Assembly: GCF_031769215.1 (NCBI RefSeq)
Contig: NW_026781891.1
Span: 372,001-436,000, forward strand
Direction: 5' to 3'
Length of the DNA: 64,000 bases
Source of the DNA: Ylistrum balloti
Lineage: Eukaryota
The translations under genes and the position numbers were made by a program. Below the pieces are notes generated by a model, which saw nothing but the letters and a program-made list of their open reading frames with translations, was not told the DNA's origin and did not search any database. Of the stretch, positions 218-41,654 are shown piece by piece. Positions within the stretch are counted from its first letter, which is position 1; every line of letters starts with the position of its first letter.

Positions 218-2748
218 GTGGAACGAAAAGTCCTTTTGAAGGGGCATGGACTACACTCAATGCGGCTGTTAATCCCGAACTGGCTGGTGTACGGGATGTA
301 TACTTCTCGGATTCTAAACCAAAAGCCTCAACATCAACCTCTAAGTAAGTGTTGATGTCAGTTGCATCAATTTCAGTTTCGTTTGAAATCAATATAAAAT
401 CATTATCAGAGATTTTCACCAAAAGATGAAAAGACCTAATTTTCGATGTGTTTCTTATTATTTTCTTCTTCAGAATTTGTGAGTTCGTAATTCTTTAAAC
501 GGTAAGTGATAGGTACGCAACCTATATTGTATGCTGTGGAAGTACATCTGAACTTGTTTATGTCTCATTTTTTAAGTAGGTCAAAAATCCAATATGACCG
601 CATTGACCCAATTACAAGAAATTCTAAAGACAGCAATAACTTGATAACTTTTTGTCCTGCAAATTTGCTACATTCATTTTTATGTAGAGGAGGGTCATAT
701 CTATTTTTTTCATACATGTTAATAAAATTCTTTCAAATTAAAAAAGCTCGCTAGGGGTCAAGGTCACCTAGAAATAGGAAAAATAATCATTAAATCTTTT
801 TGACATTTTTCCACAGTTCAATGTAGAATGTCCTCCTATCATTTTAGTCTGTACATTTTTTCTGTGACGTCTTTCTTTTAAGTAATTATTTTTTAAAATT
901 CTCTTAGTTTCATGTAAAGTGCAGACAAAAAGTTTGAACTAAAATTACTACTATGAAATTTTGTTTAATTGTTATGGAATAGGTTTGGTAACGTGCCTTC
1001 TAAATTCTGACGTGATTTTCAACTTTGTCAAAAAAAAAAAAAAAAAAAACAAGATGGCCGCCATGACGCCATATTTGATTTTTGCCCTAACGTCAATATC
1101 TCAATGATGACGTGACATTTTGAGATCATCTTTGGATATGCTAATTGGAATTGAAAATAAAAATGTTTGTGTAAAACGTCAACTTTCGGTTTTCGGTAGG
1201 GGTCAAAGTTAAAAAGTGCAATTTAGGGTACTTAACTACCAGAAACTTCTTCTCAACTTTGGAAAGCCCTAGCGGTTCGATAGTCTAACATATCTTGCTA
1301 TGGTAATTGTCTATTAAGTTTGTTAATATGGATGACCTTGACCCACTTTCACGGAGGTAAATTATATAAATAACATTAAATGACGTTTTCTTAACCTTTT
1401 AAAAGACAGTTACATGAATTGATTAACAACCTTCTGTAGAGACTTACTTTTAATTGGAATAAGCAAATCTTTCATAAAAGACCAGCTCCCGGTTTTCCTT
1501 AAGAGGTCAAAGTTCAAAACTTCTATGTATGGTATCAACATATTCGAAACTTCTTCTCAAGTTTTGAAAGGCCTAGAGTTTCGATACATCACAAATATAA
1601 TGTTAAGATAATTGCGTATTAAATTTGTAAATATGAATGACCTTGACCCAACTTTCTAGGTCACGGGGGTCAATTTTATTCCTTAATAACATTAACTGAC
1701 ATTTTCTTTCTTTTTAAGAGTAATACAGTTACGTGATTTGATTAACAACCTTCTGTAGAGATTTGGTTTTGATTGAAATAAGCAAAACTTCCACAAAAGA
1801 CCAACTTCCGGCTTTCCTAAGGGGTCAGATTTCAACACTTTAATGTAGGGTACCAACGTATACGAAACTTCTTCTCAAGTTCGGAGAGACCTAAACACAT
1901 AATACCTAATACATATAAAGCTAATATAATTGTCTATAAATGTTAATATGGATGACCTTGACCCACTTTCCAAGTCACAGGCGTCAATAATGTAAAATTC
2001 AATCCCTTGTGATCCTATGAACACTCATTACTGATAACAATTAGTAATGTTTTCCAAAAATTCAACTTCTGTATTTTTCGTTTTTTTTTTCAGTTCAAAA
2101 TTAACATTATACAGCACAAGTTTGTGATAAGGAAATGAAAACGTTATATTTTTCTAACAGCTTTTTGTAAGCCCCCCTCTGCCTTATATTTCCTGTTATA
2201 AGATTGTATAAAACACACAGTAATTAGTTTTTTAAGATATAACTTTAGAATTAAAAACAGTAGAGCCATATAATGAATTAAAATACGTAATCAGTGACCA
2301 AGCTTAACAGCTGATTTATAGGTCATCTTTGATTTTTATCTGGAATAGATTTTATGTGACCGATGCTTTAAAGAAATGTCCTCTTAGTAAAAAAATCTCG
2401 AAATAAAACTAATAGTTAGGTTATGCTTTGGTACATATGCAGATTTAGATAATAAGCCATGCTTTGAGTTTATTTAGCAAACATAAACTAAAATCTCTTT
2501 ATTATAATCTAATCACCGTTAAACTACGCGGTACACGTTTATATATGAAATAAGATTAATAAATTATAAGCAAGCAGATGAGAACGACATATTTCGCCCG
2601 ATTTTTTTTTATTCTTTTTTGAATGGTGTTAATTTATAATTATAAATTTGTCTACAGGAAGAAATCACATCAGAGGGCTGTATGGGATTACACCATCGAC
2701 AGTCTCGAAGCGTATCTACCAGACGGAGTTCTCCAGGATTTACAATAA
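218..2748 (+). CDS. SDR (retinol dehydrogenase-like) copy 1, 3' part only: exon 7 (218-344) and exon 8 (2658-2748); earlier exons lie upstream of the window
   Basis: Exon 7 reads GGTKSPFEGAWTTLNAAVNPELAGVRDVYFSDSKPKASTSTS(K) between AG (216-217) and GTAAGT (345). Exon 8 reads KKSHQRAVWDYTIDSLEAYLPDGVLQDLQ* after CAG (2655-2657). Exon sizes (127, 91 nt) and phases match the three complete paralogs. Confidence 0.9.
751..2010. repeat. Degenerate ~310-bp tandem repeat region in intron 7 of SDR copy 1, Helentron/HINE-associated satellite-like
   Basis: TGACCTTGACCCA recurs near 1331, 1636 and 1951, and GAAACTTCTTCTCAA near 1242, 1547 and 1864 (period ~305-317). GGGGTCAAGGTCA-type and AAGATGGCCGCCATG motifs are also present. 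The family assignment rests on recalled similarity to bivalve Cg170-like repeats and is unverified. Confidence 0.55.
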
Positions 2749-3914
2749 TACTTCTTAGGGATCATCCTTTGTGGATTGATATGTTACTTCACAGATCATT
2801 TCAGAAATCAGCATAGTTAGTCAAAATTTAGTACATGTTTGTAAAAAAAAATGGATAAAATAAACAGAAATATAGACTCTATACCAAGATACTTATATGC
2901 TGTTTTATGAAATATATGTATGTATATATATATACGTATCTATTCATTTTAAATAAATCGTATGATCTTACGATATCTAATTTATAGTAATTCTAAATAA
3001 ATACAGCAAAATCAATTTCCAAGTGGTTTTGATGGTGAGATAACACATTTGTAACTGTGCAATGCACTGCAAACACTTACAGCGATTTATGGACTTTAGC
3101 ACTTATCGTGTAGCTACAAGCGATCATCATATATCTATTGATCTATTTGTTGTATGTATATGTAGTAGATGTGTTGTGAATACAACAAAAGGGCGAAATT
3201 GAGTTTTTTTCCTAGTTTACGGATTCTTATATCTGATAATGTGTTTCGTTTTAAAAATAATCACGTGATAAATATCCTATATTTAGGCCGTCCAATTTGG
3301 AATCGGCCAGGGACGAAAGTTTGTCCGGACTGACCACAGGAAAGATATTTTCAGCCGAGAATACTGTTTGGAAAATTGTACAAATGCCTATGTTCAGACA
3401 ATAACTAAAGATCTTCCACAGAGGGGGAATGCTCTGTTATAGAACAGAAGTAAGGCATTAGTCTCATTACTCATTAAGAAGACAAAAATGCTGTTATTTA
3501 GAGAGAAGAGAGAAAAATATGATCGTCTTTTACAATTCGTGTACTGTACACAGTAGATACCATTCTGACGCCTTATCGGCATGACCTTCCCAATATAAAA
3601 AAAAACATTACACAACATTGAAACGTAATACATCGCCTTACATTACGAAGTTATATCACACTCAATATTATTTCAATGGTATATTGATGCACCACATTTA
3701 AAACATTTAAAAGTTCACCTGAACTATTCATTAAAACTTAAACGTAAAATTTCAAGTTATATTGAAATACGAGTTACCTAATTGAATTCAATCCTGCTGG
3801 TTGACAAAGGAGCAAACTTCAACATCCCTGTATTACTATGACTAATCTGATGAATGTCAACTGCTACTTTTAAAAACAACATCCAGCACTGGGTTTTAAG
3901 AGATACAATAAATA

Positions 3915-4560
3915 CCCAAGCGAGAAAGAAACGCAGCAGGGTAAACTTTGAATATGATTCCAGGCAAGACGTCGAGTATAATGTTTAATACTTTAAGGTA
4001 AGAATGAAGATAAATCCATACAGAACAAACCGTAAAATCAACGATTTGTACCTGGTAAATAATTTAGGAGTAATTGAAGGGAATTGAAGGGGAGCTCTGC
4101 AGCAGTCGGCAAAAAGTTCTCCACGACATCAGTATACGCGACTTCGACGTCTGCTCGAAAGAGGTTGGACCGGGACTCATCAGTAATCAAGACCCGCCCC
4201 AACTGGGGGCATGTGCCGCCACCCAAGCCAACTTTTCGCAGTGGTTTCCCCTTAGTTTTTTCATGGATAGGACAGTCTAGAGTACCTATGGTATGAAGAG
4301 CAGATTCAGTGGCAGTAAGGCGCCGATTGCGCAAAAGCGTGAGACGAATAAACCTGCCCTGACGTTGTGACTTCACGCGCGGATGCTCAGACCTAAGTCT
4401 GTCAGCAACCCGCCCAGTTTCCTTTAGACCGAAATGTCTGGCAACTTGTATTTGCCTTTGACCTTGCATAATCATCACAATGACCTGACACCCCTGTATA
4501 GTCGTGCCATTGTTTAATGCTATCAGAAATTAATCAAAACATTTTTTGTTTTTCAATGAA
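3915..4560 (-). mobile_element. Tc1/mariner-family relic, internally deleted and 5'-truncated
   Basis: The minus-strand frame gives paired-like HTH text (QVARHFG...ETGRVADR...RVKSQRQGRFIRLTLLRNRRLTA) and ITDESR, then jumps to a 3' end nearly collinear with that of the element at 11215-12614. The terminal sequence CCCAAGCGAGAAAGAAACGCA is preceded by TA at 3913-3914. The left boundary is approximate. Confidence 0.85.
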
Positions 4561-7178
4561 TGAAGGTTTGTCTATGAAAAACAAAAATTCTCCAGTTGGT
4601 TATATTCAGCTTTATACTTACAGATCATTTCTATATTTCTCTAAAGGTGTTAACAACAAGTCAGTTTTATTTAGAAAATATTACTAGCTTGCATATACTG
4701 CGACATAAAGTACATTGTTTCATGTCCCTGCATCGATGATAACGCGATATGACACGCACTAGATAAACAACACACTTGTTGGTGCGGATAGTGAGCTACG
4801 GAGATAAAATCAAAACAACCTTTTCCATTGATATAACGCACTATTATAATATTTACGTTATCGTTAATAGTTAAATAGTTAAATGTTAAAATCTAGTGTT
4901 AGGTCTTCTTGATTAGCAAACCTTCCGTTTTCCCTATTGTGTATAATTGTAATTGTAATTTACACATTTGAGTTCCGTGGAAGTTGAACATCTGTGTCGT
5001 CCACGAGAAAACAAAATTGTAAACAGTACCTTTGCCAATAATGGGCCAATGTCCTATCAGTTTCATAATGATTTCTTTTGTGTAAAGTTATAGTTTATTG
5101 TTATTATGTTATTTTTTCCTTCAACAAAACTACCAACTGAGTTGCGTAAAATAGAACCTTGTGGTGACAAAATCTAGATCTTCGTTTATATGTCTTAAAT
5201 AATTTATACGTTGAAGAAAAAATAACATCAATTTCCATAGCGTACATATGAAAAATTGAAATAGCATGAAAACCGGTGCCTATAACTCATAGAAGCGTAT
5301 GTAGATACCTGGCTAAAGAAAGGAACTTCGAACTTAGAACGGACCAATAGCATTTGCATATTAAAAGGTGATTCGTTAAGACACTTGATTCCTTCATTCC
5401 TCAAGCATTCAACACCGACGTCGACCCCAGAAAAACACACTGTACACAATAAAAATTGTCAAGTTCATTTTAGAATGGTATAGAACAACCAGGACAAATG
5501 GCAAACCCAGGAAAATCGAATTCCAGGTCAGCTAATGGTCACAAGTGATAATTCCTGCAACTTCCATTCTGGAAGAGTAGATTAACCATCAGTTGAATTT
5601 CAAGGTTTATTTTATAAAAATCGAAATTCAAATAGATTGTCCACGAAAAAAGTTTCTTAATTTATGATTTTTCTGCGATTATGACATATTTTGACTAGTT
5701 AAATATAAAGTCACCTTCCCTTGTTTCGAGATAAGACTGAATGGGCAGTATTAGAAATATGCCTGTGGTACATACTGACCATGTCAAATTAATTAATTAG
5801 TTGATGCGATATTTATATACTTAATGCACTTGAATCTCCTGAAACGTTCAACGATATATAAATCTGATTTAAAATATAACTTGATATGGCTAATGTTTAG
5901 ATTTAAACTACACTGATTGTCATCTTGGATTTTGTTAAAAACATGAACATAAATCATACCGAAAATGTACATTTAACATAGAGTTTGCAACACTAGACAA
6001 TGCATTGTATGACATGGAGAAGTATGGCTTACGTGCTTATCAATTAACGTTCTAGATTCTCACTTCTGCTGGTATTTCTGCTGTCGTCTGCAACAACACA
6101 TTGTTCTGAAATTTTAAACCAGCCTGGATATGCACTGATATATAGATGTCGGCGCTAGCTTGACCTTGCGTGTAAAGCTGCAGTTAGTCTAGTTAACCAC
6201 TGCTTTCTGTAGCATTACGCAACCACAAATAACAAGTCAAAAATGATAATAAATAACAATATAAGACCAGCAGTGCCTTACTACTAGAATAAAAAAAGAA
6301 AAAAGGACTTCTTTTTCGTATGTCCTTTCTTGATTATGACATCCATTTGTATGTTTTCATGATTTTTTTTTCGGAAGGAACTAAAATGTTATCATGAACT
6401 GTTTGAATGAAAGCAGGTATACCTGTTATATCATCATAACTGATTCTTCTCATTTTAACGTTACATACCCATGAGTATGTTTATATAGGCACATCATAGT
6501 TTGATCTGGGGTCGTTTGAATCAAGAAGGACGATCATAACAATATACAACTCCAGTTCCGCCGAAGAAGGTCAGTAAATGACACAGTTGATCTCGATAAT
6601 GTAATCTTAAAAGCTGAAACGGTGAAAAAAAACATACTAAATGTTACTATATACAATAAAGAATTCTGAGACTACGAACGAATGCGACAGGACATAATCA
6701 TCATTAATTACGTCAGTTCGACGTATTTGGAACATTCAATGAATGCATGTCGTCTAAATTGAGAATGTTTACTTGAATTAGTATTAGAATATATAAATTA
6801 CAATTACCTAACTTATGTGACGCAAAGCCAAATCACGAAAACAGCGTTAACTTTACAATGTTCTTTATCATACATAAAAGTGGTGTCGGTCAAAACCTTA
6901 TCATAGATACTTTGAAATTTTTTAGAGCATTGAGCGGATTAATAAACGTGCCATGACCTCACGTAGGTTTAAGTAGAATGTTACCAACCAAAGACATTGC
7001 ATAATTGTATAATGGATATTTAACACTTGAAGAGTGATGGTTAATCTAGCTTTTGAGTGTTAAACAACAAACGTTCAGATAGCTTCTGTGTACTGCATTT
7101 GTTGTGTTATCTGCAACAATGCATATTTTAATTTTTTTTCTGCTCCGTCTGATATTACATAACTAATGTGTAGGTAAC

Positions 7179-7267
7179 ATCACGTGATTATAGGCTGTAA
7201 ATAGCATTGACTTATGTCCGAGTCCTAAGGAAGTTTATTTGAAGGGCGGAGAAATATCATCGTCGGG
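7179..7267 (+). promoter_or_regulatory. Putative proximal promoter of SDR copy 2 (E-box, TATA-like element, GC-box)
   Basis: ATCACGTGAT (7179-7188), TGTAAATA (~7196) and GGGCGG (7244-7249) occur in the same order and similar spacing as upstream of copy 3. Function is inferred from conservation only. Confidence 0.45.
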
Positions 7268-10200
7268 ATGGGATCCAGTATCTCCTTCCCTCGGGTGTCC
7301 ATTCCAACAGATAATATTTTCGTTGTTACAGGAGGAAATACAGGTAGTTATGGTATATGACAGCAGATTGTGGTATTGTGCTATATATAGCTTATAATGC
7401 GATTCATACCCTTTGCTTGTCAAATCCTTTGATGAAGTGGCCTAAGATATATCAGTACCATTTGAATGATTTATTTGCATTATGGTAGTAATTACGATAT
7501 GTATGGCAATAATCAATTGGAGAGCGTATGGCGTACGTTATAAATAGAACACTTATTCTAGAGAATCTCGATACGTATAACAGTAGCTAAAAATAAAGAA
7601 ACAGTGTACACAAAGAATAGCTAGACATCTAGGATAGCTTGATATATGCTCATAAAATGGAAGTCAGTACATGAAGTATTAATTAACACCAACATTAAGT
7701 ATAAGCATCTTTTCTGTTCTATATATGATAATTGTCTGTCTTCTGCTTCTTCTTGAGCGAGAGCAAATGTATTACGTGGTAACACGACTTTAAGAGTTTT
7801 CGTGCAACGCTATTAGTTTCCTTTGTTTTAAACTGACATTGGATAGTCGTAACTCGTTTTGTTGACAGACGTAACAATATCTATTTCAAACTTAAATAAT
7901 ATTTACATAGAAACAAATATGGGGCTAGTGACCTCTCCTTCTATATCAAGTAATTGGTGCAGATATATCTTATCCCCCAATCCCCCCATCCCCACCCCCA
8001 TCCCCACCACTACCCTTCTGGAACTTTTGAACTCTGTATTCTTAGACGGTAGATTTGAAATGTATTTTTTTATTACTGAATCCTTCGTAATACATGTATA
8101 TGCAATCTTCTCTGGACATGAATGAAACACGCAGTACAAAGAATTGTTATTCGACATATTTGCATTCGATATTTCAGGTATAGGCTATCATACTGCTAAA
8201 TGGCTAGCCATGATGGGAGGTACCGTTATCATTGCGTGTAGATCGGAGGAGAGGGCTAAAAAGGTAAAATATCAATTTGAAAAATGTATAAGGTACCGAT
8301 ATATTCATGAACTTATATCTTAGATATTTATTTAATAAATTTTTGAATTCGATGACTTATTAGATATACACCACGAAACAAAGTCTTATTATTAAACCTG
8401 TCTATCAAGTGCAAAGATGATAATGATTGTAATTTTTAGTTTTCAATTATTACTTCTTTTTAATCCGTTCATAAAGTAGGAATACCCTGTAAATGTAAAC
8501 ATATGATTTTTATCTTGTAAATATTTCATTCGAAATACAGCTTGTTATCTATTGATGCACGAATACATTTTGTCATCGAACAATTGAGTTTTTCCCAGAT
8601 GTTAACTGAAATTTTCTTATTAGTATCACTTTGAAAATGAGAACCATTTGCAAAATATTTCATGAAAACGAGCGGGTTCAACAGAAATATTTTCATAGAA
8701 TGGACAATGCAAAATATCCACAAGAAAAAACGTTGATATCTAAAACTATTCTTATGCTATAGATAACAGCTCTTACAGAAAAACAGTTTATCCTGTTAAA
8801 AAAGTAAATAAAAAGTAATTGAAACTAGATGTACCATGTATTGTTTTAGGCTATACAACAAATGAACCAGGAATTCGCAGAGGAAAAACGAAAGAAGACA
8901 ACTGGAGTCGTTGACTATGATCAACTGAATCTTGAATTCATGCATCTAGATTGCAGTTCACTAAAATCAGTGGTGAATTTCGTTCAGGCGTACAAATCGT
9001 CGGGCAGGAAGCTACATAAGTTGATATGTAACGCTGGTATTGGCTTTCAGGACAAGTTATGTAAGTGTGATATAGACATGAAATGCTTTTTCACTTATAT
9101 AATCGGTATACAGTGTGCAATAATACAACCAGGCGTCAAATAGGTATATTAAAAAAAATTAAAATGTTTTAATAAGTAGATTAGGAATAAGGCAGTGTAC
9201 AGAAGGGTGCGTTTAGTACCATATCAAATTTGACCAAATGCAAAAGATGTTATAATATCTAAATGTGTGAATATGTACATGTACATGAAATTTGGTTCAG
9301 TTTACAATTTTGAGAAATTATTGATTTCAAACAACTGAATTACACGGTTGCAGCACCTTCCTCAGTCATTTCCTAAACTTTTCCAAAACTTAACACCTTA
9401 GCATTGTTGACGAGTCCTAGTCACAACATCTGTATGATGCAGTTAATTTTGTGTTTTAGTTATACTGTATTTGATTCTAAACTATTATGTGTTATTCATT
9501 TGCGTATATTTCATACAATTCTGAGTTATTTAAACTGGATTTTATGATACATTTGTATATTATAGATTTATTTATTAAAGAAATGTATACAATACGGGTT
9601 TTTTATGATGCATTTTATATCCTGAGTGTTTTTAATTTGGAGGTAACTGGTATACTGCTTTAAGTGATGAGTTGATTATACTCATATCGATTTCACTTTT
9701 GTCTCTTTGAGTAATGTGTCCTTATATACAGTGCATGTATTTATCAGAAATGAGGTATGTATTTTTCAGCTCACACAGAAGATGGTCATGAGCAGATTTT
9801 TCAGGTAAAGAGGAAAAGGAAAAAATTAAATTGATAAAAGTTTTAAACAATTTCGCATTAGAAATTTCGTGATCATTTGGGTATATCACGCAAAGTATTT
9901 GATCCATATGCGATTTTTAAAATTTCATGTTCCGTTACGATGAAATTGATATCACTGCAATATATCAAAACAATTAATGTTTATATCACTTAGGTGAATT
10001 ACCTAAGTCAGTTCCTGTTGGTGTCTCTTCTGCTGCCGGTAATGAAAGCATCCGGTACTGACTGCAGAATAGTACTGGTTTCTAGCATAGCCCATGAACA
10101 TGCTCGCTTTGATCCTAATGACATTGAAGGAAAGAAGTATTCGGAACCAAAGTATGACGCCACGGCATTATACTGCAGATCGAAACTTTACCAGGTAGGT

Positions 10201-13200
10201 AACACTATTATGACGTACTGTATGGGAAAGTATGGACTAGGGCACAGTTATACAAATTGTGTTTCATTGATTATTTCATAATAACCATGATTCACATGTT
10301 CTCCTCAAAACAAAAAAGTGAAATAAACTTTCCGAAAGCGAGAACAAACACTTCATTCTGAAAGTTGTGCTTTTCATTAACTAGTTGTTTTATAATTACC
10401 CTGATTCACATGATCTCGTAAAAGCATAAAGTAATACATTGTTTTGGAAGCGAGAACAAACCCGTCTTATTTTGAAGTTCACTTAAAACACACACATTCA
10501 TCGATGTACGTTTCAAGCTATATTTTAAAACCATTTTGATATAACTATTGCATGGTTCCGATATCAAGCTAACATGGAACTTTACGGAAAGAAAATGCGT
10601 CATATATGTATGATGGCTGATTTCTGCCATTTTGTTGTTTCGTTTTGTCGACCCGACATAACGATATTATCGTTTTTTCGCCAACGCGAAATAACGTAAA
10701 CTTGATGTCGCTAATTAACTTCGCCCCGCTAATTATCGTTTTTTCGCCGTGACAAAACGAACATTATCGTCTTTTCGCCCAGCTGATTAAGCTAAGGAAA
10801 TCAAAAGGATACCATTGCCATTGTCTCTTCTCAAAAGGCTGGTGTAGCTGCTCAGCTCCGCCATTTTAAATGTCTAGGTTCTATTATCCTTCTAACCGGA
10901 ATACAAGAAGACGATAATTATCGTTTTGTCGCGGCGAAAAGACGATAAGTAGCGGGGCGAAAAGACGATAATTATCGTTTTGTCGGTGCGAAAAAACGAT
11001 AATTAGAATTAGAATAACTAAAAACGGTGAATACCATACCACTTGTAGTTCATTAATCTGATGAATTCGTCTCGCCAAAGTAATAGTAGGACAAGTTTTA
11101 TTAACAACGATGAAATATGACGAATGTAAAACATATATCAATGTTCTGATACAATTGATGAAGAAGTTGGGCGCATCTTAACATATTCGTGTACAGCTGT
11201 ATGAACTATATATAATCAATGGATAAAGAAACGCAGATTGACATTATTTCCAATATCTTGCAAACGCGTTGTTCAAAAACAATGACAAACGGTCAAGCGG
11301 CTCTTTTGGTTACAGTACATGTGGTCCTGTATCGAATGTTTCATTATTGACGATGTCTTCCGGGGAAAGCACGAAACGGGAACATCTCGTGCACAACAGT
11401 GTTATGATATTGTGACACTGCTCGTCATAACATTAAGAAGTTTTTATAGAGCAACATCCTTTTCCGTTATTTTGATTTATTTCTGATAGCATTGAACAAT
11501 GACACGGCTGACGGAAGTTCAGAGGGGTCAGGTTGCCATTTCGGTGTCCATATTTGCACTATAGAAACTGGATGGGTTACTGACAGACCCAGGTCTGGGC
11601 GTCCACGCGTGACGTCACAACGTCAGGACAGGTTTATTTGTCTCGCACATTTGTGCAATTGGCACCTTACTGCCGCTGAATCTTCCCTTCATACCATAGG
11701 TACTCATAACCGTCATATCCATGCATAAACTGTAAGGAAACGATTGCGGAAAGTTGGTCTGCGAGCATATCACCCGTTTGTAGGTCTGTCACTTACCGCT
11801 GCTCGTCGCAAGCTTCGTATGGCTTGGGTGGCGACTTATACCCCAAGAATATTACCATTGTGGCAGTGGCGACAGGTCTTTTTTCTGATGAGTCCCGGTT
11901 CACCCTGTTTAAGATGACGTTCCACGTCATGTATACCGGCGTCGTGGAGAACGTTTTGCCGACTGCTGCGTAGTAGAGAGGATATGTTTGGGGATGGATC
12001 GGTTACGGTGTGGGGAGGAATATCACATGGAGTTAAATCACCACTGTTTGCGGTAGCTGGTAATTTAACTGTCGCTAGGTATAGAGATGAGATCTTCCGT
12101 TCCAATGTTAACCCATTATTGAAACAAAGCAACCTCAGGTTCCTGCAGGACCAGCTCGGCCTTATGTAGCGAGGATCTGTCGCGACTTTCTCACTAACAA
12201 CAATATACACCCACTGGACCGGCCGCCATACAGCCCCGATCTATCCCCTATTGAACACTTGTTGGACTAGCTGAATAGACAGATTCGACTACACAAACCT
12301 CCCCCTGTTACTCTGGCCAAACTAAGAGCAGCGGTCTTGGAAGAATGGACCACCATCCTAATGAGGAGGATAAACTCATTCATGAACACAGTGCTATGGA
12401 TAGAGAGACCGGTATTGACTAGCCAGCTCCCACAATCAGTCAATTCCGATTACATATTACAGAGTTCTCTTTCAATTCCCTTCAATTTTGCAATTTGCAG
12501 TTTATTCTGTATGGATTAATCTTCATTCTTACTTAGAAGTATTGAGCATTACACTCGATGTCATGCCTAGAATCATCTTCATCAAGTTTACCTTGCGTTT
12601 CATTTTCTCTTGAGTATTTATGAAGACAACTGATCTGATTTAGGTAATGCAGATGTACCGGTTGAATCAGGCCATCAAAGACACTGATGTAACTGCCTTA
12701 TCCCTACATCCAGGCATCGTCCGAACGCCCCTCCTTGCTACTTTCAGAAGGGGATCCACAAGGGTTTTAATGGCCTGCTTAGATTGTATTGGTAAGAAAT
12801 TGAAATTTGATTTGTTTAACTCTCTGAATTATCACAGATTTTTAAACAGTGTAAACAATACGTCCCGTCTCTAGAAAGTCTTCCCAACATGCCGAATGAT
12901 TTAGCCAATCATGTGACGGGAAAAGGTTGTATTTGTTATGTGTTTATATACCTTTAAGTCGTTTTACACGAAATGAGGATATAACTGCAACTTTCCTATG
13001 CAAAACGATAGGATAGGACATAGGAGTACAAAGCAATTTGTTAAATAAAGGAGTTGAAATTAGCATATTTAAAATAATGTTTTATAATAAAATGTCGTCT
13101 TGTAATTAACAACATGATAGCCTACTCGGAAACAAGTCAAACGATATAACAGACAAGAAAATACCAACTTAATTATAATCCAATCTCAAATTAAAAAAAA

Positions 13201-14434
13201 CTTCAGCAAAATATGAACAAAAGAAAGATTTACAAACGCAGTTGGAGAAAAAGAAAATGTGTTCTGGAAGAGTAAGTATTTCGTTACGTCGACGACATCC
13301 GCTTTGAAAACCTTTGTCAATCAAAGTAAGTAATGTCACACTCTCAAATAAGAACAAGGAATACAACAACGGAACCACCAGGCAACGTAACGAACATCAA
13401 ACACGTCCAGTTTCATAATGCACAAAGAAAAAAAATATTTCTCGATAAAATCAGTATGACGACCGCAAAACTTTCCGATAATTTTATCAACCTGCAGCTT
13501 TTGAAACATGTTCTACGAGTTTGTCCGTCAGTTGAGAATTATTGTACGAAAATCATGATAATGGGAACATTTCCTTGAATATCGAATTATCTGCGCCATG
13601 TAAACAAAATATGTTGGAGAGGCAGGAAGGATACAATTTGGAAATGGAAAATTCACTATAAGAAAATTGAAATCCTCACGTTAATCATACAGCGTGGTGG
13701 GGAGCTGCCCATGTTGGTTGTAGGAAAAGTTCGCGATAAGCGGCTAATTTTGAAGAGTCTTTGGTGTCTTTGATTTCCATTTCTGGTTGATATATACGAC
13801 GGAGATTGTACAAAGACGTCATCAATATAAGAAGTGCTAACAACTATTTGATTTGATGCAATATTATCATTATAACTATTATTCTTTGATATTTGTTAAC
13901 TTTTCCATAAATCATTTATTTGATTTCACCAACAAAGGCACGTCCAAGAGTCCGTTTGAAGGAGCATGGACCTCACTTAATGCGGCTATTAATCCGGAGC
14001 TGGCTGGAGTACGAGATGTCTATTTCTCCGAGTGCAGACCAAAAGAACCGATAACAGCTGCCAAGTAAGTCTGGATTGGTTAAAATTTGCAGTAAAACAT
14101 ATCTGTGCATATACATATGTTCTTAAAGGTCGCTAGGGATAAAAGGACCTCTATTAGTTGCTGTCTTTGTGTTGTTATGGAAACAGTTATAAGAATTAAG
14201 TAACTTTTTTCTGTACCTAATGATAATGTTATACATCTAGTAAAATGAATAAACCAATATAGAATGTAGTCATTCAGAAAAAAAGAAGACTACCGATACG
14301 ATTTCAAAAGATGACTGATGATATAAATATTGTTTGTTCGCAGAAACAAAGCATCCCAGGACGCTCTTTGGGATCACACTCTGGAATGTCTCAAAGACTA
14401 TCTCCCAGAGGACATTCTTAGAGAACTAAAATAA
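7268..14434 (+). CDS. SDR, retinol dehydrogenase-like (RDH11-14/WWOX clade), copy 2; 324 aa, 8 exons
   Basis: Exons 7268-7343, 8178-8263, 8850-9060, 9770-9804, 9994-10194, 12644-12791, 13938-14064 and 14344-14434 total 975 nt, with all introns GT-AG and phases compatible. Motifs: TGGNTGIG, ACRS, ICNAG, VNYLSQFLL, VSS, YCRSK and LHPG. Confidence 0.93.
7974..8015 (-). repeat. C-tract cluster (G-quadruplex-capable on the - strand) in intron 1 of SDR copy 2
   Basis: CCCCCAATCCCCCCATCCCCACCCCCATCCCCACCACTACCC has at least five runs of 4 or more C and is absent from the alignable intron of copy 4 (~36240-36270). Confidence 0.6.
10640..11004. mobile_element. Foldback/MITE-like element with ACGATAATTATCGT subterminal repeats, in intron 5 of SDR copy 2
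   Basis: 10720-10748 and 10933-10961 are inverted repeats (27/29 match). There are multiple TTATCGTTTTTTCGCC / GGCGAAAAGACGATAA units. The element is absent from the paralogous intron of copy 4. Exact ends were not resolved. Confidence 0.7.
11215..12614 (+). mobile_element. Tc1-family DNA transposon (DD34E), decayed, 1400 bp, in intron 5 of SDR copy 2
   Basis: It has imperfect 21-bp TIRs (16/21) and TA on both sides (11213-14, 12615-16). Transposase fragments from ATG 11499: DRPRSGRPRVT, FSDESRF, VTVWGGIS, LQD...PYSPDLSPIEH, with 34 residues between the second D and E once a 1-nt deletion is allowed. Stops and frameshifts are present. Copy 4 has the empty site (GAACTTTAAATG-TA-TTTATGAAG, ~39332-39354). 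Confidence 0.92.
13245..13835 (-). mobile_element. Penelope-like retroelement fragment (RT catalytic motif, thumb and 3' tail), decayed, in intron 6 of SDR copy 2
   Basis: Minus-strand translation gives YIDDV (13815-13829), IYQPEMEIKDT, GQLPTTLYD*REDFNFLIVNFPF, YFVYMAQIIRYSR and KFCGRH. These match the motif order I recall for invertebrate Penelope-like RTs. The segment is absent from intron 6 of copy 4. Confidence 0.85.
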
Positions 14435-15462
14435 TATCTCTTAAAGGAGAAAACCTGAAGGACGATATCAATCAGAAGAAAAAGTCTGTCGTGATCTGAA
14501 AAAAAGAAAATGAGTTTGCTAGGTTTAGCATTATGACTACATAATATATATCATAAACGTATGTTATAATCAGAGATGCCGATTGAATTCATTATAACCT
14601 AGTGTCGTGAAAAAAAATTTCGAGAACTACTCATGCCATGGGATTCATATATTCAAATATTATGACTTTACTAGTTTAACACTGGTGCTAATTGTTAACT
14701 TTATCATAATGTCTTTTATGTATACAATGTACAATCATTTTGTTCTATTCATGGACTGTTTAAAACTGACAAAAGATCTGAGGTAATGATATGCTATTTA
14801 TAGTCTTTTTCATATTACAACAGCAACAGTAAACATGCAGATTATATATCTATATAAATGTATAACACGACGATCTGTACATATTATATTGTGTGATTTC
14901 ATTATATAGAGTAAATGTAAGTTAAAAATACCTTTTATTAAAATTGACGTATCTATTTTGTTGATACATTATTAATTCTATGGAACAGGAAAAAATAACC
15001 TAAATGAATTTCACCAATTTGCATCTCTAGTAACGCTGTTTTAAATCCATTCCTCAGTAAACCGAAATACATGCCTTCGACTCTTGGCCATTATTACTTA
15101 ATTTACTTAATTTGATGGAAACTATAGTGTACTGTTTACATCAACATATTATATCAATGAACGTAGAGAGGGTAATTCTGGCGAATTCATCAATATGCTA
15201 TCTCATTGTGCCCATTTTTTGTAGTTCACATGAAATACAAAAAAGGAGCATATTATGTGTATTGATATGGTACTTCACAGACCATCTCAGGAATTATCAC
15301 GCCACACTTAGTTCATATGTAGTACATACTTGTAACAAATAAATAAAAAAAAACCCAGAAATATATGTTTTTTACCCAAGAATCGTATTGTTGATTTTTA
15401 TTTATCAATCATGTAAAAAGTCACTAAAAGTCACTATAACACATATGGCAAGAATTATAATG

Positions 15463-16341
15463 CAGCTGTGGTAGCGCACAATGCACCAAAACCATCGTGC
15501 ACAAACAGGTCTAAACCGTATCGTGTGCACAACTGCGCTATAGGATCGCACATTTTGTGCGGTTGGGTAAATATGGTTGGCTTATATTACGGATTGAAAA
15601 TTAAACGGAAGTTATTACTAAATAGCGATCGCATGAACATTAAAATTGATCGGTGATTATAAAAATAATTTTCAATTCGACAGTTTTCGAAATAACACTG
15701 GACATGCATTAATTAGTCGTATCGTGTGTAGTTTCACGCCTCAGATCATGGCCAGTAGTGATGCACCAGGCAACAAAAGTTTACCTGCATACGGTTGTTT
15801 ACGTGACAGACGAGATCCGTCCCGGCTGGATTTATCTCTGTATATATTTGTTGTTTATAAAATGAATGAAAAAAAAAATGAGAATAACGTAGAAGTAATG
15901 AAGATAACATTTCCTTGCTGACGGTATTATATTTTAAATTATTCATTGCTGTGACATAAAGAGATGTCCATTTAACGTTTATATATATAACGTGTGTCCG
16001 TACACTAAAGCTGACCACGCGTGGCACTTTGTACACAAAATACTTAAACTTACGAGTGTAGCTAACTATTCAGCGTGTATCTGATATATCTACAAGTGCC
16101 CTACCTATATATTAATGGCTTAATTAGGAAATATACTTAGCTGTACTCTAATATATTTAGAAAATAAATAAACCCTATCTCATACCTATTCATAAGTCAT
16201 TTCTACATTAATATCAACCACGATTGAATCGCACATCTGTGCGATAGAACCACACAAATGTGCGAAAGCTTATTTTGTCCAGTTTTTCTGTTGTGCATAC
16301 ATCGTGCAGACATCGTGTAACGCTGTGCTATCCCACAACTG
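15463..16341. mobile_element. Possible non-autonomous DNA transposon derivative with degenerate inverted ends
   Basis: The left end CAGCTGTGGTAGCGCAC and internal TCGCACATTTTGTGCGGTT have imperfect inverted counterparts at 16200-16341. A 27/31 inverted match to the left end also occurs at 20257-20287, which indicates a dispersed family. Confidence 0.4.
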
Positions 16342-18529
16342 TACAAAGGCTCTAAGTATATATAATATGTGATTTACCTAGGCACATCATGGAGATTCTA
16401 ATTATACAGTTTAAAGGTAAAGACATCAGAATGAAGGTACACATATAGATAACCCATATAGGTAGCATCATTTTGATACACAAGGGATTTTGTTTTAAAG
16501 TAGTTCTACATCCTTCTACAAGTCCTAGAAAATTTACTGTTAAACAGTGCGAATACAGTGTTCCTGTAAGCCTTCTTGTGATAAGATGGAACTGATATCG
16601 AATCTATAGTGAACGGCTGAAATAGAGTTTTTTTCCAGTTTACTTGAAGTGCCGCTGCTTCTTATAACTGGTAGTGTGGTTCGTTTGAATATGATCATGT
16701 GATAAATGTGTTATATCTACGTAGTTTGATTTTGAATTGTCCAGGAATAATTCCACCAATTTGTTTGTCCGAACTGAGCACAGAAAAAAAAAATTAATGT
16801 CGAGAATATTTTTTTAAAATCCAGAAATTTGCACTTTAATCAGGAACTGTTACTTTAAAAACTCTGGTATCTTTAGACAAGGGTACAGAACCAAAGGCCT
16901 TCCTTAGAGAGGCAAATACTCTACTTTAGGCTAGAAGTATGGCAGTGCCACATGAATAATTAAAAAGAAGAAGAAGAAAAAAACCAATTCTTTAGAAAGA
17001 GAAGAACAAGAACAGACCGTCTTTTACAAATCATGCACTGTATAAAATAGGTAAAATTTTGACGCCTTATCTACAGGACCACTGCAAGCTAGAAACCATG
17101 ATTAGGTCATTTCACACTAAATATTATTTCCCTGGATCATTAATGTAACATAATTCAAAAATTTGAACCAACATTTAAAAGTCCAATTGAACTACTTGTT
17201 AAAAACTCAACAATTCCGGTGTGTCAAAATTTCAAATAGTATTTAAATATAAAGTTTATCTAGTTGAATCAGATCGTGCTGCTTCTTGACACAAGAATAA
17301 AAGAAATACAGTTACATGGCCAATGTCTTACCAATTCCATAATGATTTCTTTTGTGTAATGTTAATGTCCCTACATATTATTTCAAAATATACATATGTT
17401 AGTATTATTACTTTTTTCATGACATTCTGGACAAAATATTGCCGATGACTTGCGTAAATTTGTGGTGGCAAAATCTAGATCTTTGTTTATTTGTTGAACA
17501 TAAATTATTATACATTTTCATTAAAGTCCCTCCATCCTTGTTCATTCCCCAAGCATTCAACACCGAGTTCGACCCCGGAAAAAACAGACAGTACCCAACC
17601 AAAGATGCCATGTCCTTTTTAGAATTGCATAGAACAACCAGGACATATGTCAAACCAGGAACAATGAATTCTTGATATAAGGTTATACCGAGGCAGCTAA
17701 TGGTCACGAGTGATCATTTATGCAAGGTCTTTTTCTGAAAGAGTAGTTTAACTATCAGCTGACTTTTAAGATTTATTTCATAAATACCGAACTTCAAATA
17801 TATTGTCCATGAAGCATCTCTTAACTTATGATTTTTTAGCGACTAAGAGTAATTTAGACTATCTATATATGTTTCATGTTTAGATTTAAACTACTTTGAT
17901 GTGACTTTCTTAATGACACTATAATTTAATGATATTGTGCTCACCTTAGATTTACGAATGCATGTTACAGGACAATATCATTATTAATTATGTAAATATA
18001 TGACGTATTTGGAACATTCGATAAATGCATATCGTCTAAATCGATTATGTTTACTTGAATAAGTATTAGAAGATATGAACAACAATTACCTAAATTATGT
18101 GATGTTTAAACTCAATCTCACGAAGAAAGTGTCTTATTACAATGTTCTTTATAGCTTAGTGTCAGTCGAAACCTAATAGATATTTGAACATATTTTAGAG
18201 AATTGAGCGGATTAATAAATGTGTCTTGACCATTACCTCACGTAGGCTTAAGTAGAATGTGACCAACCAAAGACATTGCATTCAATATACAATGAATATT
18301 TAACGCTTGAAGAGTGTTGATCAAGCGAGCATTTAATTGTTTAACAACAAAGAGTCGAGACGCTAACCTTACTATCCTAAGATGGCCTAGTTCCGTGAAC
18401 TACATTTGCAGTGTCATTTGCAACAATGCATGCTTTAACTATTATCTGCTCCGCCGGATCTAAACTAATGAATAGACGGATTGAATAACACATTTACCTA
18501 GTTGCTATCGTTCTTGTGTTGCCGGTAGC

Positions 18530-18612
18530 ATCACGTGACTAAAGGATATAAATGACATTGACTTTATGCCCGGGTCTTACTTAAGTAAGGGCGGAGAAGA
18601 ATCATCGACGGA
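18530..18612 (+). promoter_or_regulatory. Putative proximal promoter of SDR copy 3 (E-box, TATA, GC-box)
   Basis: ATCACGTGAC (18530-18539), TATAAAT (18547-18553) and GGGCGG (18589-18594) are collinear with the copy 2 upstream region. Confidence 0.5.
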
Positions 18613-21600
18613 ATGGGATCCACTCCCTCCTTCCCTCGGGTGTTCATTCCCAAAGATAACATTTTCGTGGTTACAGGAGGAAATGCAGGTGATTATAAGT
18701 TATGAATCAGCAAATATGCACATACTTCTAAATAAATAACTCTCACTTTGTTATATCATATATAATAGTTTGTTTTTATGAAAATTACCCACATTTGGGA
18801 ATCAGCAAATCTAGAGTAATAACAGCTCTCTAGAATTATCACATTGTTTTTGTTATGCTGGTTATATCCAGTGATGTAATTGATGAAATTGCATACCGTG
18901 TTACGATGATATCTCGCTACTCCAGATGGGATAGCGTCATCATTTTACCTAGCGTAACAATGTCAAAAAATGATCATGCTGATGAAAAGGTTTAATAGCA
19001 ATTCTCAATTTGTTGCTGTTTTAAGCCTCATGCTGATCTGCCCAGCTCTTACACTCGGGTTGGGATATTCCTTTCTACAACAGTCTTATATATAAGACTC
19101 TTTAATCTTATTGTTGTGATTGTTGTAGTTGCTTTCAATAACATCGCCTCCTTTTATTTATGTTCAGGTATCGGCTACCATACTGCTAAATGGCTAGCTA
19201 TGATGGGAGGTACCGTTATCATAGCGTGCAGATCTGAGGAGAGAGCTAACCGGGTAAATATGATTTAAAAAAACAATTCATGTATGTTTTGTATTGTTTA
19301 AAATCAAATTAGCTGATATAAGAAAATCACAAAATTTATTGATTAATTGGTCTATTTATCTTCCTGTCTAGAATAGGACTTTCTTGTCTTTTGTACAAGC
19401 TTCTCTACGAAACACCAAAAACGCATTTGAAAGACAACCATTGTATCAATTTTGAAAGTCAACCATCATATCTATTTTGATAGTCAACCACTGTATCTAT
19501 TTTGCTAGTCAACCACTGTATCCATTTTGATAGTCAACCAATGCATCAATTTTGAAAGTCAACCACTATATCTATTTTGATAGTCAACCACTGTATCTAT
19601 TTTGCTAGTCAACCACTGTATCAATTTTGAAAGTCAACCACTGTATCTATTTTGCTAGTCATCCACTGTATCAATTTTGATAGTCAACCACTGTATCTAT
19701 TTTGAAACTTTATCAGAACGTTTATTTCAAAATATTGATTTAAGTGCATATATGTGCATTTTATACTGATAAGAGGAAAACGCGTCATTGAATACGCCCT
19801 GGCATAGATAATGAATACCGCGTCTTCAACATTCTTGACTCAGGTGTATAACCTGCATAGCATGACATTGAAGGATTAATAGAGCATGAATCTTGATTGT
19901 AACTGTTTAACTTCATGAACCCAGCAAGGTTGTCGTACTCAGATCTGAGGACAAAGTATTTGGTTATAGGATCTTAAGATGAAAGAGAGTTTCCTTAGAC
20001 TTAGGGACAAAGGATGTCTTTCACAAATTTTATTATTCAATTCCTATGACATCCTAGGACGTGGAGTATCTTTTTGAGATTGGAAGGTTTTAGGGCCTCG
20101 AAGTCTATTCTTATGACATATATTTAGTTTTCAGTTTTTTTTTAAAAATTATTGATAAAAAATACTAAGCTCAAATTAAATAAAACTAGTACAGAAATAT
20201 GAACAATAGAAAGATTAACAAGGAGACTCAAGCAAAAGGACAAGGAGAATAGACCAGTTTTTGGTGCATTGTGCGTTATCACAACTGTGTTAAATTCTTG
20301 GTGGATTCGAATCATCATCCGGTCGATTAACTGCACAATTTGTATAATTAGCAGTGTGCAAAATCTACATTGAGTTTTCAGCTTATCGAAGTTCTTTGCT
20401 TAAATTCGTTATATGTTATATATAAGTACCTGATTTTGCAATGATAACGCGTATATTATCTGCTATTTTTTCAACCCAATAATAGGAACATCAAATATAC
20501 AAAGACAATCCTCAGAAATAAAAATATTATCATTATATATATCTTAAATTCAAAATATTACAGATTGTGAAATAATTTCCTGCAAATAAAGAAATTTGAA
20601 ATAACTTATATCTGACAAGAATCAACAGTTCATTGTGAAATTTGGAAATACGTAAATTTTGAAGAGTTGTAAACCTTTTTATATGATATCTTGTTTCAGG
20701 CGATACAGCAGATGAACGAGGAATTCTCAGAAGAAAAACGGAAGAAGACTGACGGAATAGTAGACTACGACCAGCTGAATGTTGAATTCATGACTCTAGA
20801 TTGCAATTCATTCAAATCAGTGATGAGTTTTGTTGAATCTTTCAAATCATCAGGAAGGAAGCTTCACAAGCTTATTTGTAACGCTGGTTTAGGCCTACAA
20901 GATAACTTAGGTAAGTTTCCTTTATACTAAGATTTTGTTACAGAACTTTCATACATCATTTTATAATAATACAAACTATGATGTAGTATAGTACTGTAAA
21001 TCACTTAGTTTTCGGGAATATTTCGTGAGCTTACCCCTTCACACATATTCGCAAATACATGACTTCGCGAATGCTGATCTAGCAATGATTTTAAATTCAC
21101 GAATGATGCAGTCTGCGAGACTCCGATATCGGTAATCGAGTGAAAAAGGATGCAAAGTTATTTTTTGTACAAATAAATGAGAGGTATTTGAATTGCGAAA
21201 ATAAATTCCACTTGAAATATAAGTGATTTACAGTATATACCAAGTGTCTGACATAGTTTTTGACAGCTTGGCATAACTACACATAACGTGTGAGGACCAT
21301 TGAAATATTTCACTGATTACACTCATCTTTACATTATGTATGTTGTATGTGTAGATGTCCATGTGAGATATTATATGAATTGTAAAGCAAGGAAAAAAAC
21401 CTCTTTTTCTTTCTTTCTAATGTATCAATTTCGAATATATAAAAAAATACCAGCAACTTCTATTGTAGTGACAGATTTACATTGATAAAGGAGGATTTGT
21501 GTTATACACATCATGTACCTAAGCCTTACTACAATAAACTAAGATAGCAATCGTTTCTATATGCAATCCATCCTTAGGAAATGCAAGACATATGCATGTA

Positions 21601-33060: not shown

Positions 33061-33134
33061 GAACAAAACCCAACCATAAAGCTCTTTGCGATTACACCAT
33101 GAATTGTCTCAAGGAACTACAATGGTATCTTCCA
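33061..33134 (+). pseudogene. Isolated decayed SDR exon 8
   Basis: After the acceptor TTCACAG, the sequence reads GAACAAAACC...GCTCTTTGCGATTACACCATGAATTGTCTCAA, a 27/32 match to exon 8 of copy 4. It carries a +1 frameshift, a conserved Trp changed to Cys, and a 9-nt insertion before YLP. Confidence 0.75.
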
Positions 33135-34389
33135 AATACCCAAGTAATATGGTCTGTGCACAGCACACTAAACCTCCAAACTCCCAGGAAACAGAAAAAA
33201 GTGAGAGTTCTAGGCATAACGAAAACAGCATCAAGAGAAAACCCCAGGTCTGTACAGAACTGTTCATCAGTTTTATGAAAATTGCAAAATTTGCTGAATT
33301 ATAGGACTGTTACACTTTCTCCACCTTGCTTTTACATTCCTTTCGAAGAATTTGATTCCCGCAGCCGCTTAACATTCAGGCCATTAAAATCACTGTCATG
33401 ATATCGTAGGACAAAATAAGATGCAGTTAAATTCACTGCTTGACTCTACTTCTGTAACTGCATTTGTATAAAATAGTGCTATTAACTTGTGTGTCTTTTG
33501 CGCAATTTTTAAGTTTAAGATAGACTATGGGAATTCTCGTTATATTGATATAATTTTTTTTATATATTGTAACTTGTTTAAATTCTTTCTGTTGGTTCTA
33601 ACATGTGAACAGTATTCATCGCATTGATTTTAGTTTTAATAACTAACACTTGTATGAAGATGACGAAGAAAACACATATTTTCATATATTTATTTTGATT
33701 CTCAAAAATTCTTTCCCAAAGCAGACACCCTATTTTGCATATATGCATCCCCTGTATACCTTACATTAACATTTAAGGTATGATACTGTAAGAATAGTTT
33801 CCTTCATTTAAGAAAGGTAAAATTCGAAATGGTATCACGTCACCAAAAATATCATGAAGATTTTTCTGCCAGTCTCCTCTGTTTTTTTTTCTTTTCCTGT
33901 TTCTCTTAATAAGGTAATATATGTGTATTTTTTATCAATGTTGCAAGCTAGTGTACATGTGAGCTGTGTGATGTCTGAGTGAAAATGATATGCTATGAAT
34001 GTAATCAATACCATATATTGCTGAAAATTCTGAATAAAAAGAAAATTAAAAAAAAAAAAAAAAAAAAATCACGAAGGTTTCACAAACAAATAAATATCCA
34101 GATGCAGATATGTTCCACTTCGACCTAACCGTAAATTCTGATAAGCCTTTTGGCAGGCTAATTCAGCAGATGAAAGAAAGTGGGTCTTATTTTCCAATGC
34201 CAGCCAGGAACATTCCATCAACTTGACATGGTCGTTTACATGGTATTTATGATTACGATACCCTTAAAAATAAAACCATATATGATTCTTTTCTTGCATA
34301 GGCTTATCGTAAAGTGTTGTTTTTTTCCTGAAATGTCTCAACTCCTCGGAACTCAAATATCTACACGGAGACTCATGCAAAAGCACAGG

Positions 34390-41634: not shown

Positions 41635-41654
41635 GGGTGGGTGGGTGGGTGGGG
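41635..41654 (+). repeat. (GGGT)4GGGG G-quadruplex motif
   Basis: The sequence is GGGTGGGTGGGTGGGTGGGG; d(GGGT)4 is a well-characterised parallel G-quadruplex former in vitro. Confidence 0.75.

What the first reader, a model, noticed from the sequence alone, without database searches (positions are those of the whole stretch)
3190..15290. SDR copy 2 looks like a promoter-swap chimera, i.e. a collapsed duplicate of the whole copy 3-esterase-copy 4 block
Seen: the upstream DNA of copy 2 (~3190-7345) aligns with the upstream DNA of copy 3 (~16615-18690) but not copy 4. Its introns and 3' flank (to ~15290) align with those of copy 4 (to ~42110) but not visibly with copy 3. Hand counts: exon 1 differs from copy 3 at 9/76 and from copy 4 at 15/76, whereas exon 2 differs from copy 3 at 10/86 and from copy 4 at 4/86. 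Affinity switches at ~7331-7360, where TATGACAGCAGATTGTGGTATTG matches copy 4 intron 1. Inference: the block was duplicated, then a crossover between copy-3-like and copy-4-like genes deleted the middle (including an esterase copy). That would place a copy-4-type enzyme under a copy-3-type promoter.
Basis: partly seen in the sequence, partly recalled or inferred. Interest (0 to 1): 0.7.

Follow-up and report, generated by a model that had tools for sequence, protein, structure and literature searches.

The report
Hybrid scallop dehydrogenase gene from unequal crossover
In a scallop's row of four related dehydrogenase genes, the second gene is a real, transcribed hybrid with the promoter and first exon of one neighbour and the body of another, an ordinary kind of gene-family rearrangement.

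Summary
The window is Ylistrum balloti contig C34 and carries a tandem array of short-chain dehydrogenase (SDR) genes: c1, c2, c3, a minus-strand carboxylesterase, c4 and a pseudogene c5.

- **Upstream half.** Copy 2's upstream DNA and exon 1 (2759-7351) align only with the copy 3 upstream region (15245-18696).
- **Downstream half.** From about 10-25 nt into intron 1 to 15236, copy 2 aligns only with copy 4 (to 42111). Copy 3 introns align with neither.
- **Counts.** A maximum chi-square scan puts the switch at the exon 1/exon 2 boundary of the coding alignment (p = 5e-5).

At 15237-15244 the copy-4-like flank abuts DNA homologous to the stretch that starts 11 nt after copy 1's stop codon, which is a tandem-duplication junction. 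Both halves have the same neutral divergence (K2P about 0.25; dS 0.25).

Contigs from three DNA runs bridge the switch. One run holds a correctly spliced copy 2 transcript.

Best reading: the block spacer-c3-esterase-c4-flank duplicated, and an unequal crossover in the exon 1 region deleted about 17 kb from the left copy. This is a Lepore-type hybrid gene and is ordinary. Whether copy 2's expression follows copy 3 is untested.

The parts
218..2748 (+). 3' end of SDR copy 1 (exon 7 218-344, exon 8 2658-2748). The rest lies upstream of the window. The full 323-aa model is identical to database protein P0140.
2759..7267 (+). Spacer c1-to-c2, which is the left end of the left repeat unit. It is collinear with 15245-18612 at 77.9% ungapped identity.
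3908..4539 (-). Fragments of a dispersed repeat, inverted relative to the copy in c2 intron 5. Absent from the copy 3 spacer.
7181..7203 (+). Core promoter motifs shared with copy 3 (18532-18553): an E-box-like hexamer at 7181-7186 and a TATA-like box at 7196-7203. They are degenerate or absent at copy 4.
7268..7343 (+). c2 exon 1 (76 nt), copy-3-like: 9 differences from c3 and 15 from c4.
7352..7368 (+). Interval in which affinity switches from copy 3 to copy 4 (nt 9-25 of intron 1). This is the inferred crossover site.
8178..14434 (+). c2 exons 2-8 (8178-8263, 8850-9060, 9770-9804, 9994-10194, 12644-12791, 13938-14064, 14344-14434) and their introns, all copy-4-like. The 324-aa product is identical to P0142.
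11207..12621 (+). Dispersed repeat of about 1.4 kb (more than 40 genomic copies at 73-79%) inserted in c2 intron 5. Absent from c4.
14435..15236 (+). c2 3' flank, homologous to the c4 3' flank 40531-42111.
15237..15244 (.). Tandem-duplication junction. The end of the copy-4-type flank is joined to sequence homologous to window 2759 onward.
15245..18612 (+). Spacer c2-to-c3, which is the left end of the right repeat unit.
18613..24146 (+). SDR copy 3 (8 exons, 322 aa, identical to P0137). Its introns cannot be aligned with those of c2 or c4.
27757..30565 (-). Carboxylesterase gene (Pfam COesterase, E = 4.7e-59 for the N-terminal exon). It has no counterpart in the left unit.
33066..33137 (+). 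Relic of an SDR last exon between the esterase and copy 4.
35547..40530 (+). SDR copy 4 (8 exons, 324 aa, identical to P0138).
40531..42111 (+). c4 3' flank up to the right end of the duplicated block.
44902..45817 (+). Copy 5: pseudogene fragments (pieces of exons 5 and 7, with stop codons and a deletion).

Best explanation
Copy 2 is a hybrid gene of the kind made by unequal crossover between tandem paralogs. The inferred ancestral array was c1 - spacer - c3 - esterase - c4 - flank. A block running from just after the c1 stop codon to about 1.6 kb past the c4 stop codon was duplicated in tandem. That step is shown by the junction at 15237-15244 and by equal divergence of both halves. In the left copy, a crossover between the c3-type and c4-type genes removed about 17 kb: c3 introns 1-7 and exons 2-8, the esterase, and the c4 upstream region and exon 1. 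The crossover fell in the roughly 110-bp exon 1 region, the only stretch where c3 and c4 are still about 86% identical. This deletion step is inferred. The product has the c3-type spacer, core promoter, 5'UTR and exon 1 (25 codons), joined in frame to c4-type exons 2-8 and 3' flank. It is intact, evolves under purifying selection, and is transcribed and correctly spliced. The duplication happened in the Ylistrum lineage after its split from Pecten.
For: - **Homology pattern.** There are two collinear homologies with a single switch.
- **Exon affinities.** Among c2/c3/c4, exon 1 has 7 sites where c2 matches c3 against 1 where it matches c4. Exons 2-8 have 36 against 196. With c1 as a fourth sequence, exon 1 has 3 sites grouping c2 with c3 and none grouping c2 with c4, while exons 2-8 have 10 and 67. 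The tests give p = 2.7e-5, 0.0035 and 5e-5.
- **Duplication junction.** It lies at 15237-15244, with the c4 flank on its left and the post-c1 sequence on its right.
- **Equal age of both halves.** Spacer pair K2P is 0.263. Six of the seven c2/c4 introns and the flank give 0.22-0.27 (intron 6: 0.40), c2-c4 dS is 0.249 and c2-c3 exon 1 dS is 0.18. Old paralog pairs have dS 1.0-1.9, and c3 introns give no HSP.
- **No outside donor.** The genome holds no c3-type or c2-type copy outside this array.
- **Gene integrity.** All copies have intact 8-exon GT-AG models, identical to annotated proteins. Omega is 0.09-0.25.
- **Independent DNA and RNA.** DNA contigs from 3 runs in 2 studies bridge 7343. A 784-nt contig shows splice joints e1-e2-e3-e4-e5 and runs on into the start of exon 6.
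- **Other scallops.** The syntenic loci hold 2 SDR genes (Pecten maximus) and 1 (Mizuhopecten yessoensis), with no esterase in the stretches fetched. Between species only exons align across the SDR array.
Against: - **Deletion not observed.** It is inferred by parsimony. No genome with the uncollapsed left block was found, so an insertion into the right block cannot be formally excluded.
- **Short exon 1.** It is 76 nt, and its c3 affinity rests on 7 triplet sites and 3 quartet sites.
- **Ambiguous exon 1 relationships.** c3 and c4 differ at only 9/76 sites there, and the first ~25 nt of intron 1 are closest between c3 and c4. c2 is the divergent copy, with 7 changes of its own. Exon 1 taken alone is therefore close to a star tree.
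- **Lower spacer coverage.** Only 52% of the shorter spacer aligns, against 74-99% for most introns.
Confidence: 0.78

Rival explanations
1. The same two rearrangements happened in the opposite order or in a single step. In one version, a Lepore-type deletion haplotype (c1 - spacer - hybrid - flank) arose first and was later joined by a non-homologous unequal exchange to a full-length haplotype. In the other, a replication template-switch event copied spacer plus exon 1, jumped to c4 intron 1 and ran to the flank.
For: The end product is identical. The junction at 15237-15244 lies in non-homologous DNA with at most a few bases of microhomology. That suits end joining or template switching.
Against: Nothing in the sequence separates this from the main reading. 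It needs two haplotypes to coexist, or a complex single event.
Confidence: 0.12
2. Gene conversion rather than deletion. Either a c3 duplicate had its body and flank overwritten by c4, or a c4 duplicate had its promoter overwritten by c3.
For: Conversion between tandem paralogs is common. Exon 1 is unusually similar in all copies, with dS 0.4-0.6 against 1.2-1.9 elsewhere. That could reflect past short conversions.
Against: The tracts would have to be 8 kb or 4.5 kb long and end exactly at the unit boundaries. No homology is available at the outer end to resolve them. Both halves also have the same age, which a later conversion would not predict.
Confidence: 0.05
3. Copy 3 is the chimera. In this reading the duplicated unit was spacer - X - flank, and the right copy later received about 17 kb (c3 body, esterase, c4 upstream region and a second exon 1) inserted into intron 1.
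For: Triplet data cannot be rooted. In exon 1, c3 sits in the middle, with only 1 change of its own. Pecten and Mizuhopecten lack the esterase at this locus in the stretches fetched.
Against: This reading needs a donor that carried an anciently diverged SDR body. The genome holds no other c3-type copy. It also needs both insertion ends to fall in the same 110-bp exon 1 region.
Confidence: 0.05

Closest known systems
Lepore-type hybrid genes from unequal crossover between tandem paralogs (haemoglobin Lepore delta-beta fusion; red/green opsin hybrids). Cited from my own knowledge.
   Same: The 5' part comes from the upstream paralog and the 3' part from the downstream paralog. There is one switch point inside a short stretch of shared sequence, the DNA in between is lost, and the fusion is in frame.
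   Different: Here the deletion lies inside one copy of a previously duplicated block. Both parental genes therefore survive next to the hybrid. The event is old (K about 0.25) and was found in all three individuals checked, so it is not a rare variant.
CYP11B1/CYP11B2 chimeric gene of glucocorticoid-remediable aldosteronism. Cited from my own knowledge.
   Same: It is a promoter swap: the regulatory region and first exon(s) of one tandem paralog drive the coding body of the other.
   Different: That case is a duplication product with a proven change in regulation and a disease phenotype. Here the regulatory consequence is untested, and only 25 codons come from the promoter donor.
DHRSX / WWOX / RDH12-14-like classical SDRs of molluscs (names given by NCBI to the identical and related proteins)
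   Same: The Pfam adh_short domain is present. So are the TGxxxGxG, NAG and YxxxK motifs and the 8-exon structure.
   Different: No substrate is known for this scallop subfamily. It has 4 copies here, against 2 in Pecten maximus and 1 in Mizuhopecten yessoensis at the syntenic locus.

Membership tests
Classical short-chain dehydrogenase/reductase (Pfam PF00106 adh_short) | Match to the adh_short profile | tested here: met
   The full-length proteins identical to c1-c4 carry precomputed PF00106 and PF13561 hits. A single exon alone scores below the cut-off (E = 0.026).
Classical short-chain dehydrogenase/reductase (Pfam PF00106 adh_short) | Glycine-rich cofactor motif TGxxxGxG, the NAG motif and catalytic YxxxK | tested here: met
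   All four copies have the glycine-rich motif at residue 21 (TGGNAGIG in c1 and c3, TGGNTGIG in c2, TGGNAGVG in c4). All have NAG at residue 114 or 115. All have YCRSK or YGRSK at residues 194-196.
Hybrid gene by unequal crossover (Lepore type) | The 5' segment is closest to one paralog and the 3' segment to another, with a single switch point | tested here: met
Hybrid gene by unequal crossover (Lepore type) | The switch lies in sequence shared by both parents | tested here: met
   The switch at 7352-7368 lies at the 3' edge of the only c3/c4 stretch with 85.6% identity (18605-18715 against 35539-35647).
Hybrid gene by unequal crossover (Lepore type) | Loss of the DNA between the two parental genes in the recombinant unit | tested here: met
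   The left unit (2759-15236) has no counterpart of 18716-35546 of the right unit. That this is a loss rather than a gain in the right unit is an inference.
Hybrid gene by unequal crossover (Lepore type) | The reading frame is kept and the product is expressed | tested here: met
   The ORF is intact at 324 aa. A spliced contig is present in run X6.
Promoter-swap chimera with changed regulation (CYP11B1/B2 type) | The hybrid's expression follows the promoter donor | not tested
   Only presence of a transcript was seen. No paralog-specific expression comparison was possible, because the read-laying cap is one call.

The most novel reading that the evidence does not exclude
The hybrid is more than a by-product. 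Placing a c4-type enzyme under c3-type regulation created a new expression domain that was kept by selection. Afterwards the c3-derived first exon was released from the strong nucleotide-level constraint that holds it nearly unchanged in c1, c3, c4 and Pecten. It has 7 changes of its own in 76 nt, including A25T in the cofactor-binding loop. That would make this a dated natural example of neofunctionalisation by promoter capture in a mollusc.
Probability: 0.2. Interest if true: 0.45.

Novelty: new member of a known kind. Interest (0 to 1): 0.25.

Why it matters
This is a clean case of how tandem gene families are remodelled, with both breakpoints located to within about 20 bases. A block duplication was followed by an internal unequal crossover, which gave a third expressed gene with a swapped promoter while both parents survived. 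It also shows that the four annotated Ylistrum balloti proteins at this locus do not share a single gene tree. That matters for anyone building phylogenies or orthology tables for these SDRs. The mechanism itself is textbook, so the general interest is modest.

Tried and rejected
- I switched to coordinates only.
- **Exon-level family and structure scans.** They said little. Pfam gave E = 0.026 for exon 3 and nothing for exons 5 and 6. The PDB sequence search with exon 5 found nothing.
- **Earlier scan notes.** They held nothing for this window.
- **Orthology to other scallops.** I tried to assign c1-c4 to the Pecten and Mizuhopecten genes. The protein tree is an unresolved polytomy. Between species only exons align across the SDR array, so other scallops could not show whether DNA was lost from the left block or gained by the right.
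- **Faster evolution of c2.** A test for c2 evolving faster than c4 outside exon 1 was negative: 13 against 11 assignable amino-acid changes.
- **Assembly artefact.** Rejected. The paralogs are only 70-80% identical, and three independent contig sets bridge the switch.
- **Handling of spliced models.** Exons were searched by reference. The full-length queries were database proteins (P0002 and its hits). Joined coding sequences were built from coordinates only inside local scripts.
Full report
**What is in the window.** The window is G000 contig C34, bases 372001-436000. Proteins identical to my gene models are named by NCBI as Ylistrum balloti proteins, so the genome is that of this scallop.

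I built the gene models from conserved blocks, reading frames and GT-AG sites. There are four intact 8-exon short-chain dehydrogenase (SDR) genes on the + strand:
- c1 starts 4.2 kb upstream of the window and ends at 2748.
- c2 spans 7268-14434.
- c3 spans 18613-24146.
- c4 spans 35547-40530.

There is also a pseudogene c5 at 44902-45817. A carboxylesterase on the minus strand (27757-30565) lies between c3 and c4. It matches Pfam COesterase at E = 4.7e-59. My four models translate to exactly the database proteins P0140, P0142, P0137 and P0138. All four carry the SDR motifs.

**Checking the observation.** Self-BLAST gives two collinear homologies for copy 2:
- Its upstream DNA and exon 1 pair with the copy 3 upstream region (3195-7351 with 16619-18696).
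- Everything from exon 1 to 15236 pairs with copy 4 (35547-42111).

With the same sensitive settings, no intron of c3 gives any HSP to c2 or c4. The 5.5 kb upstream of c4 gives none to either spacer. A four-way alignment shows only a faint core-promoter similarity of about 100 bp, common to all copies.

Exon 1 differs from c3 at 9/76 sites and from c4 at 15/76. Exon 2 differs at 10/86 and 4/86.

Sites that discriminate between the copies shift sharply after exon 1:
- Among c2, c3 and c4, exon 1 has 7 sites where c2 = c3 against 1 where c2 = c4. Exons 2-8 have 36 against 196 (Fisher p = 2.7e-5).
- A maximum chi-square scan places the break at the exon 1/exon 2 boundary of the coding alignment, with permutation p = 5e-5.
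- With c1 as a fourth sequence, exon 1 has 3 informative sites for (c2,c3) and none for (c2,c4). Exons 2-8 have 10 and 67 (p = 0.0035).

In the genomic alignment the last c3-type site is 7351, and the first c4-type sites are at 7360-7369. That is nt 9-25 of intron 1.

**Not an artefact, and expressed.** Contigs from three public DNA runs in two studies run straight across the switch: X1 covers 6389-8210, and X3 and X5 cover 5400-7595. A fourth run holds a 784-nt contig that joins 7246-7340, 8175-8261, 8848-9060, 9770-9802 and 9992-10197. It then runs on into letters that read like the start of exon 6. All joints fall at my GT..AG sites. Copy 2 is therefore real DNA, and it is transcribed and spliced as modelled.

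**New evidence for the block model.** The spacer homology does not start at 3190. It starts at 2759, 11 nt after the c1 stop codon, and pairs with 15245.

The c4-type flank of c2 ends at 15236, which corresponds to 42111. Beyond 42111 the c4 flank matches neither spacer. The three-way alignment shows c2 following c4 up to about 15236 and following the post-c1 sequence from about 15245.

This is the signature of a tandem duplication of one block. The left unit is 2759-15236 and the right unit is 15245-42111. The left unit lacks the counterpart of 18716-35546, about 16.8 kb. That missing stretch holds the c3 body, the esterase, a relic SDR exon at 33066-33137, and the c4 upstream region and exon 1.

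**Same age for both halves.**

| Comparison | Ungapped identity | Distance |
|---|---|---|
| Spacer 2759-7237 vs spacer 15245-18582 (1746 columns) | 77.9% | K2P 0.263 |
| c2 vs c4 introns 1-5 and 7 | 78-81% | K2P 0.22-0.27 |
| c2 vs c4 intron 6 | 69% | K2P 0.40 |
| c2 vs c4 3' flank | 80% | K2P 0.23 |
| c2 vs c4, exons 2-8 (synonymous) | n/a | dS 0.249 |
| c2 vs c3, exon 1 (25 codons) | n/a | dS 0.18 |
| Older paralog pairs | n/a | dS 1.0-1.9 |

One duplication event explains both halves. A later gene conversion would not.

**Mechanism.** The only stretch where c3 and c4 remain similar is 18605-18715 against 35539-35647, at 85.6% identity. It covers exon 1 with a few flanking bases. The switch in c2 sits at its 3' edge.

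A single unequal crossover there, within the left copy of the block, yields exactly the observed hybrid. The alternatives are weaker:
- An insertion into the right block would need a donor for an anciently diverged SDR body. The genome has none outside this array. It would also need both ends of the insertion to fall in the same 110 bp.
- Conversion would need tracts of 4.5-8 kb that end at the unit boundaries, where no homology is available.

The order of duplication and deletion cannot be resolved. Neither can a one-step template-switch origin.

**Context in other scallops.** The locus is syntenic in Pecten maximus. It lies between an NAAA-like gene and a conserved downstream gene and has two SDR genes, with no esterase in the 48.7 kb fetched. 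In the Mizuhopecten yessoensis locus, which starts with the same NAAA-like gene, there is one SDR gene. Between species only exons align across the SDR array. The K of about 0.25 duplication is therefore specific to the Ylistrum lineage. The protein tree of the subfamily is an unresolved polytomy apart from a fully supported (c2,c4) pair.

**Function.** All copies evolve under purifying selection, with omega 0.09-0.25. c2 and c3 share an E-box-like hexamer and a TATA-like box about 70-90 nt upstream of the ATG. At c4 these are degenerate or missing. The statement that a c4-type enzyme sits behind a c3-type promoter is therefore structurally correct. Whether its expression follows c3 could not be tested here.

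**Verdict.** The event is a well-documented but ordinary example of hybrid-gene formation by unequal crossover in a tandem family.

Exons were searched by reference, and the full-length queries were database entries.

Noticed in passing
window 7268-7366, compared with 18613-18715, 35547-35647, L014 (c1 exon 1) and L016/L017: Exon 1 is far better conserved at the nucleotide level than the rest of the gene. Between old paralogs dS is 0.4-0.6 against 1.2-1.9 elsewhere, and it is 80-91% identical to Pecten maximus exon 1 copies. In c2 alone it has 7 changes of its own, giving 4 amino-acid changes including A25T in the TGGNAGIG loop. All copies begin MGxxxS, which resembles an N-myristoylation signal by my own reading.
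   Followed up: partly
L017/L016 (Pecten maximus LR736842.1, 18984257-19032963); merged coordinates 6131-6220, 9977-10095, 14552-14648 and 28336-28435: Pecten maximus has four exon-1 copies, each with an ATG and a GT donor, for only two SDR gene bodies. Three of them lie upstream of the first gene's exon 2. They could be alternative first exons or relics of collapsed copies.
   Followed up: partly
window 33066-33137 (+): A decayed SDR last-exon relic lies between the esterase and copy 4. It is 82% identical over 60 nt to a Pecten last exon, and the tblastn E-value is about 0.3. It points to a further dead copy in the array.
   Followed up: partly
window 11207-12621 (+) and 3908-4539 (-): A dispersed repeat of about 1.4 kb, with more than 40 genomic copies at 73-79% identity, sits in c2 intron 5. 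Inverted fragments of it sit in the c1-c2 spacer. Both are absent from the partner unit, so they inserted after the duplication.
   Followed up: no
window 1180-1988, 19426-19707, 50367-50680 and 63585-64000; L013 about 6640-8040: Several tandem-repeat arrays. One is in c1 intron 7, one is in c3 intron 2, and a 1.4-kb array lies upstream of the window.
   Followed up: no
window 48166-55460: Long stretches 74-75% identical to Pecten maximus DNA downstream of its SDR pair. They probably come from a conserved gene with long exons and mark the far edge of the syntenic block.
   Followed up: no
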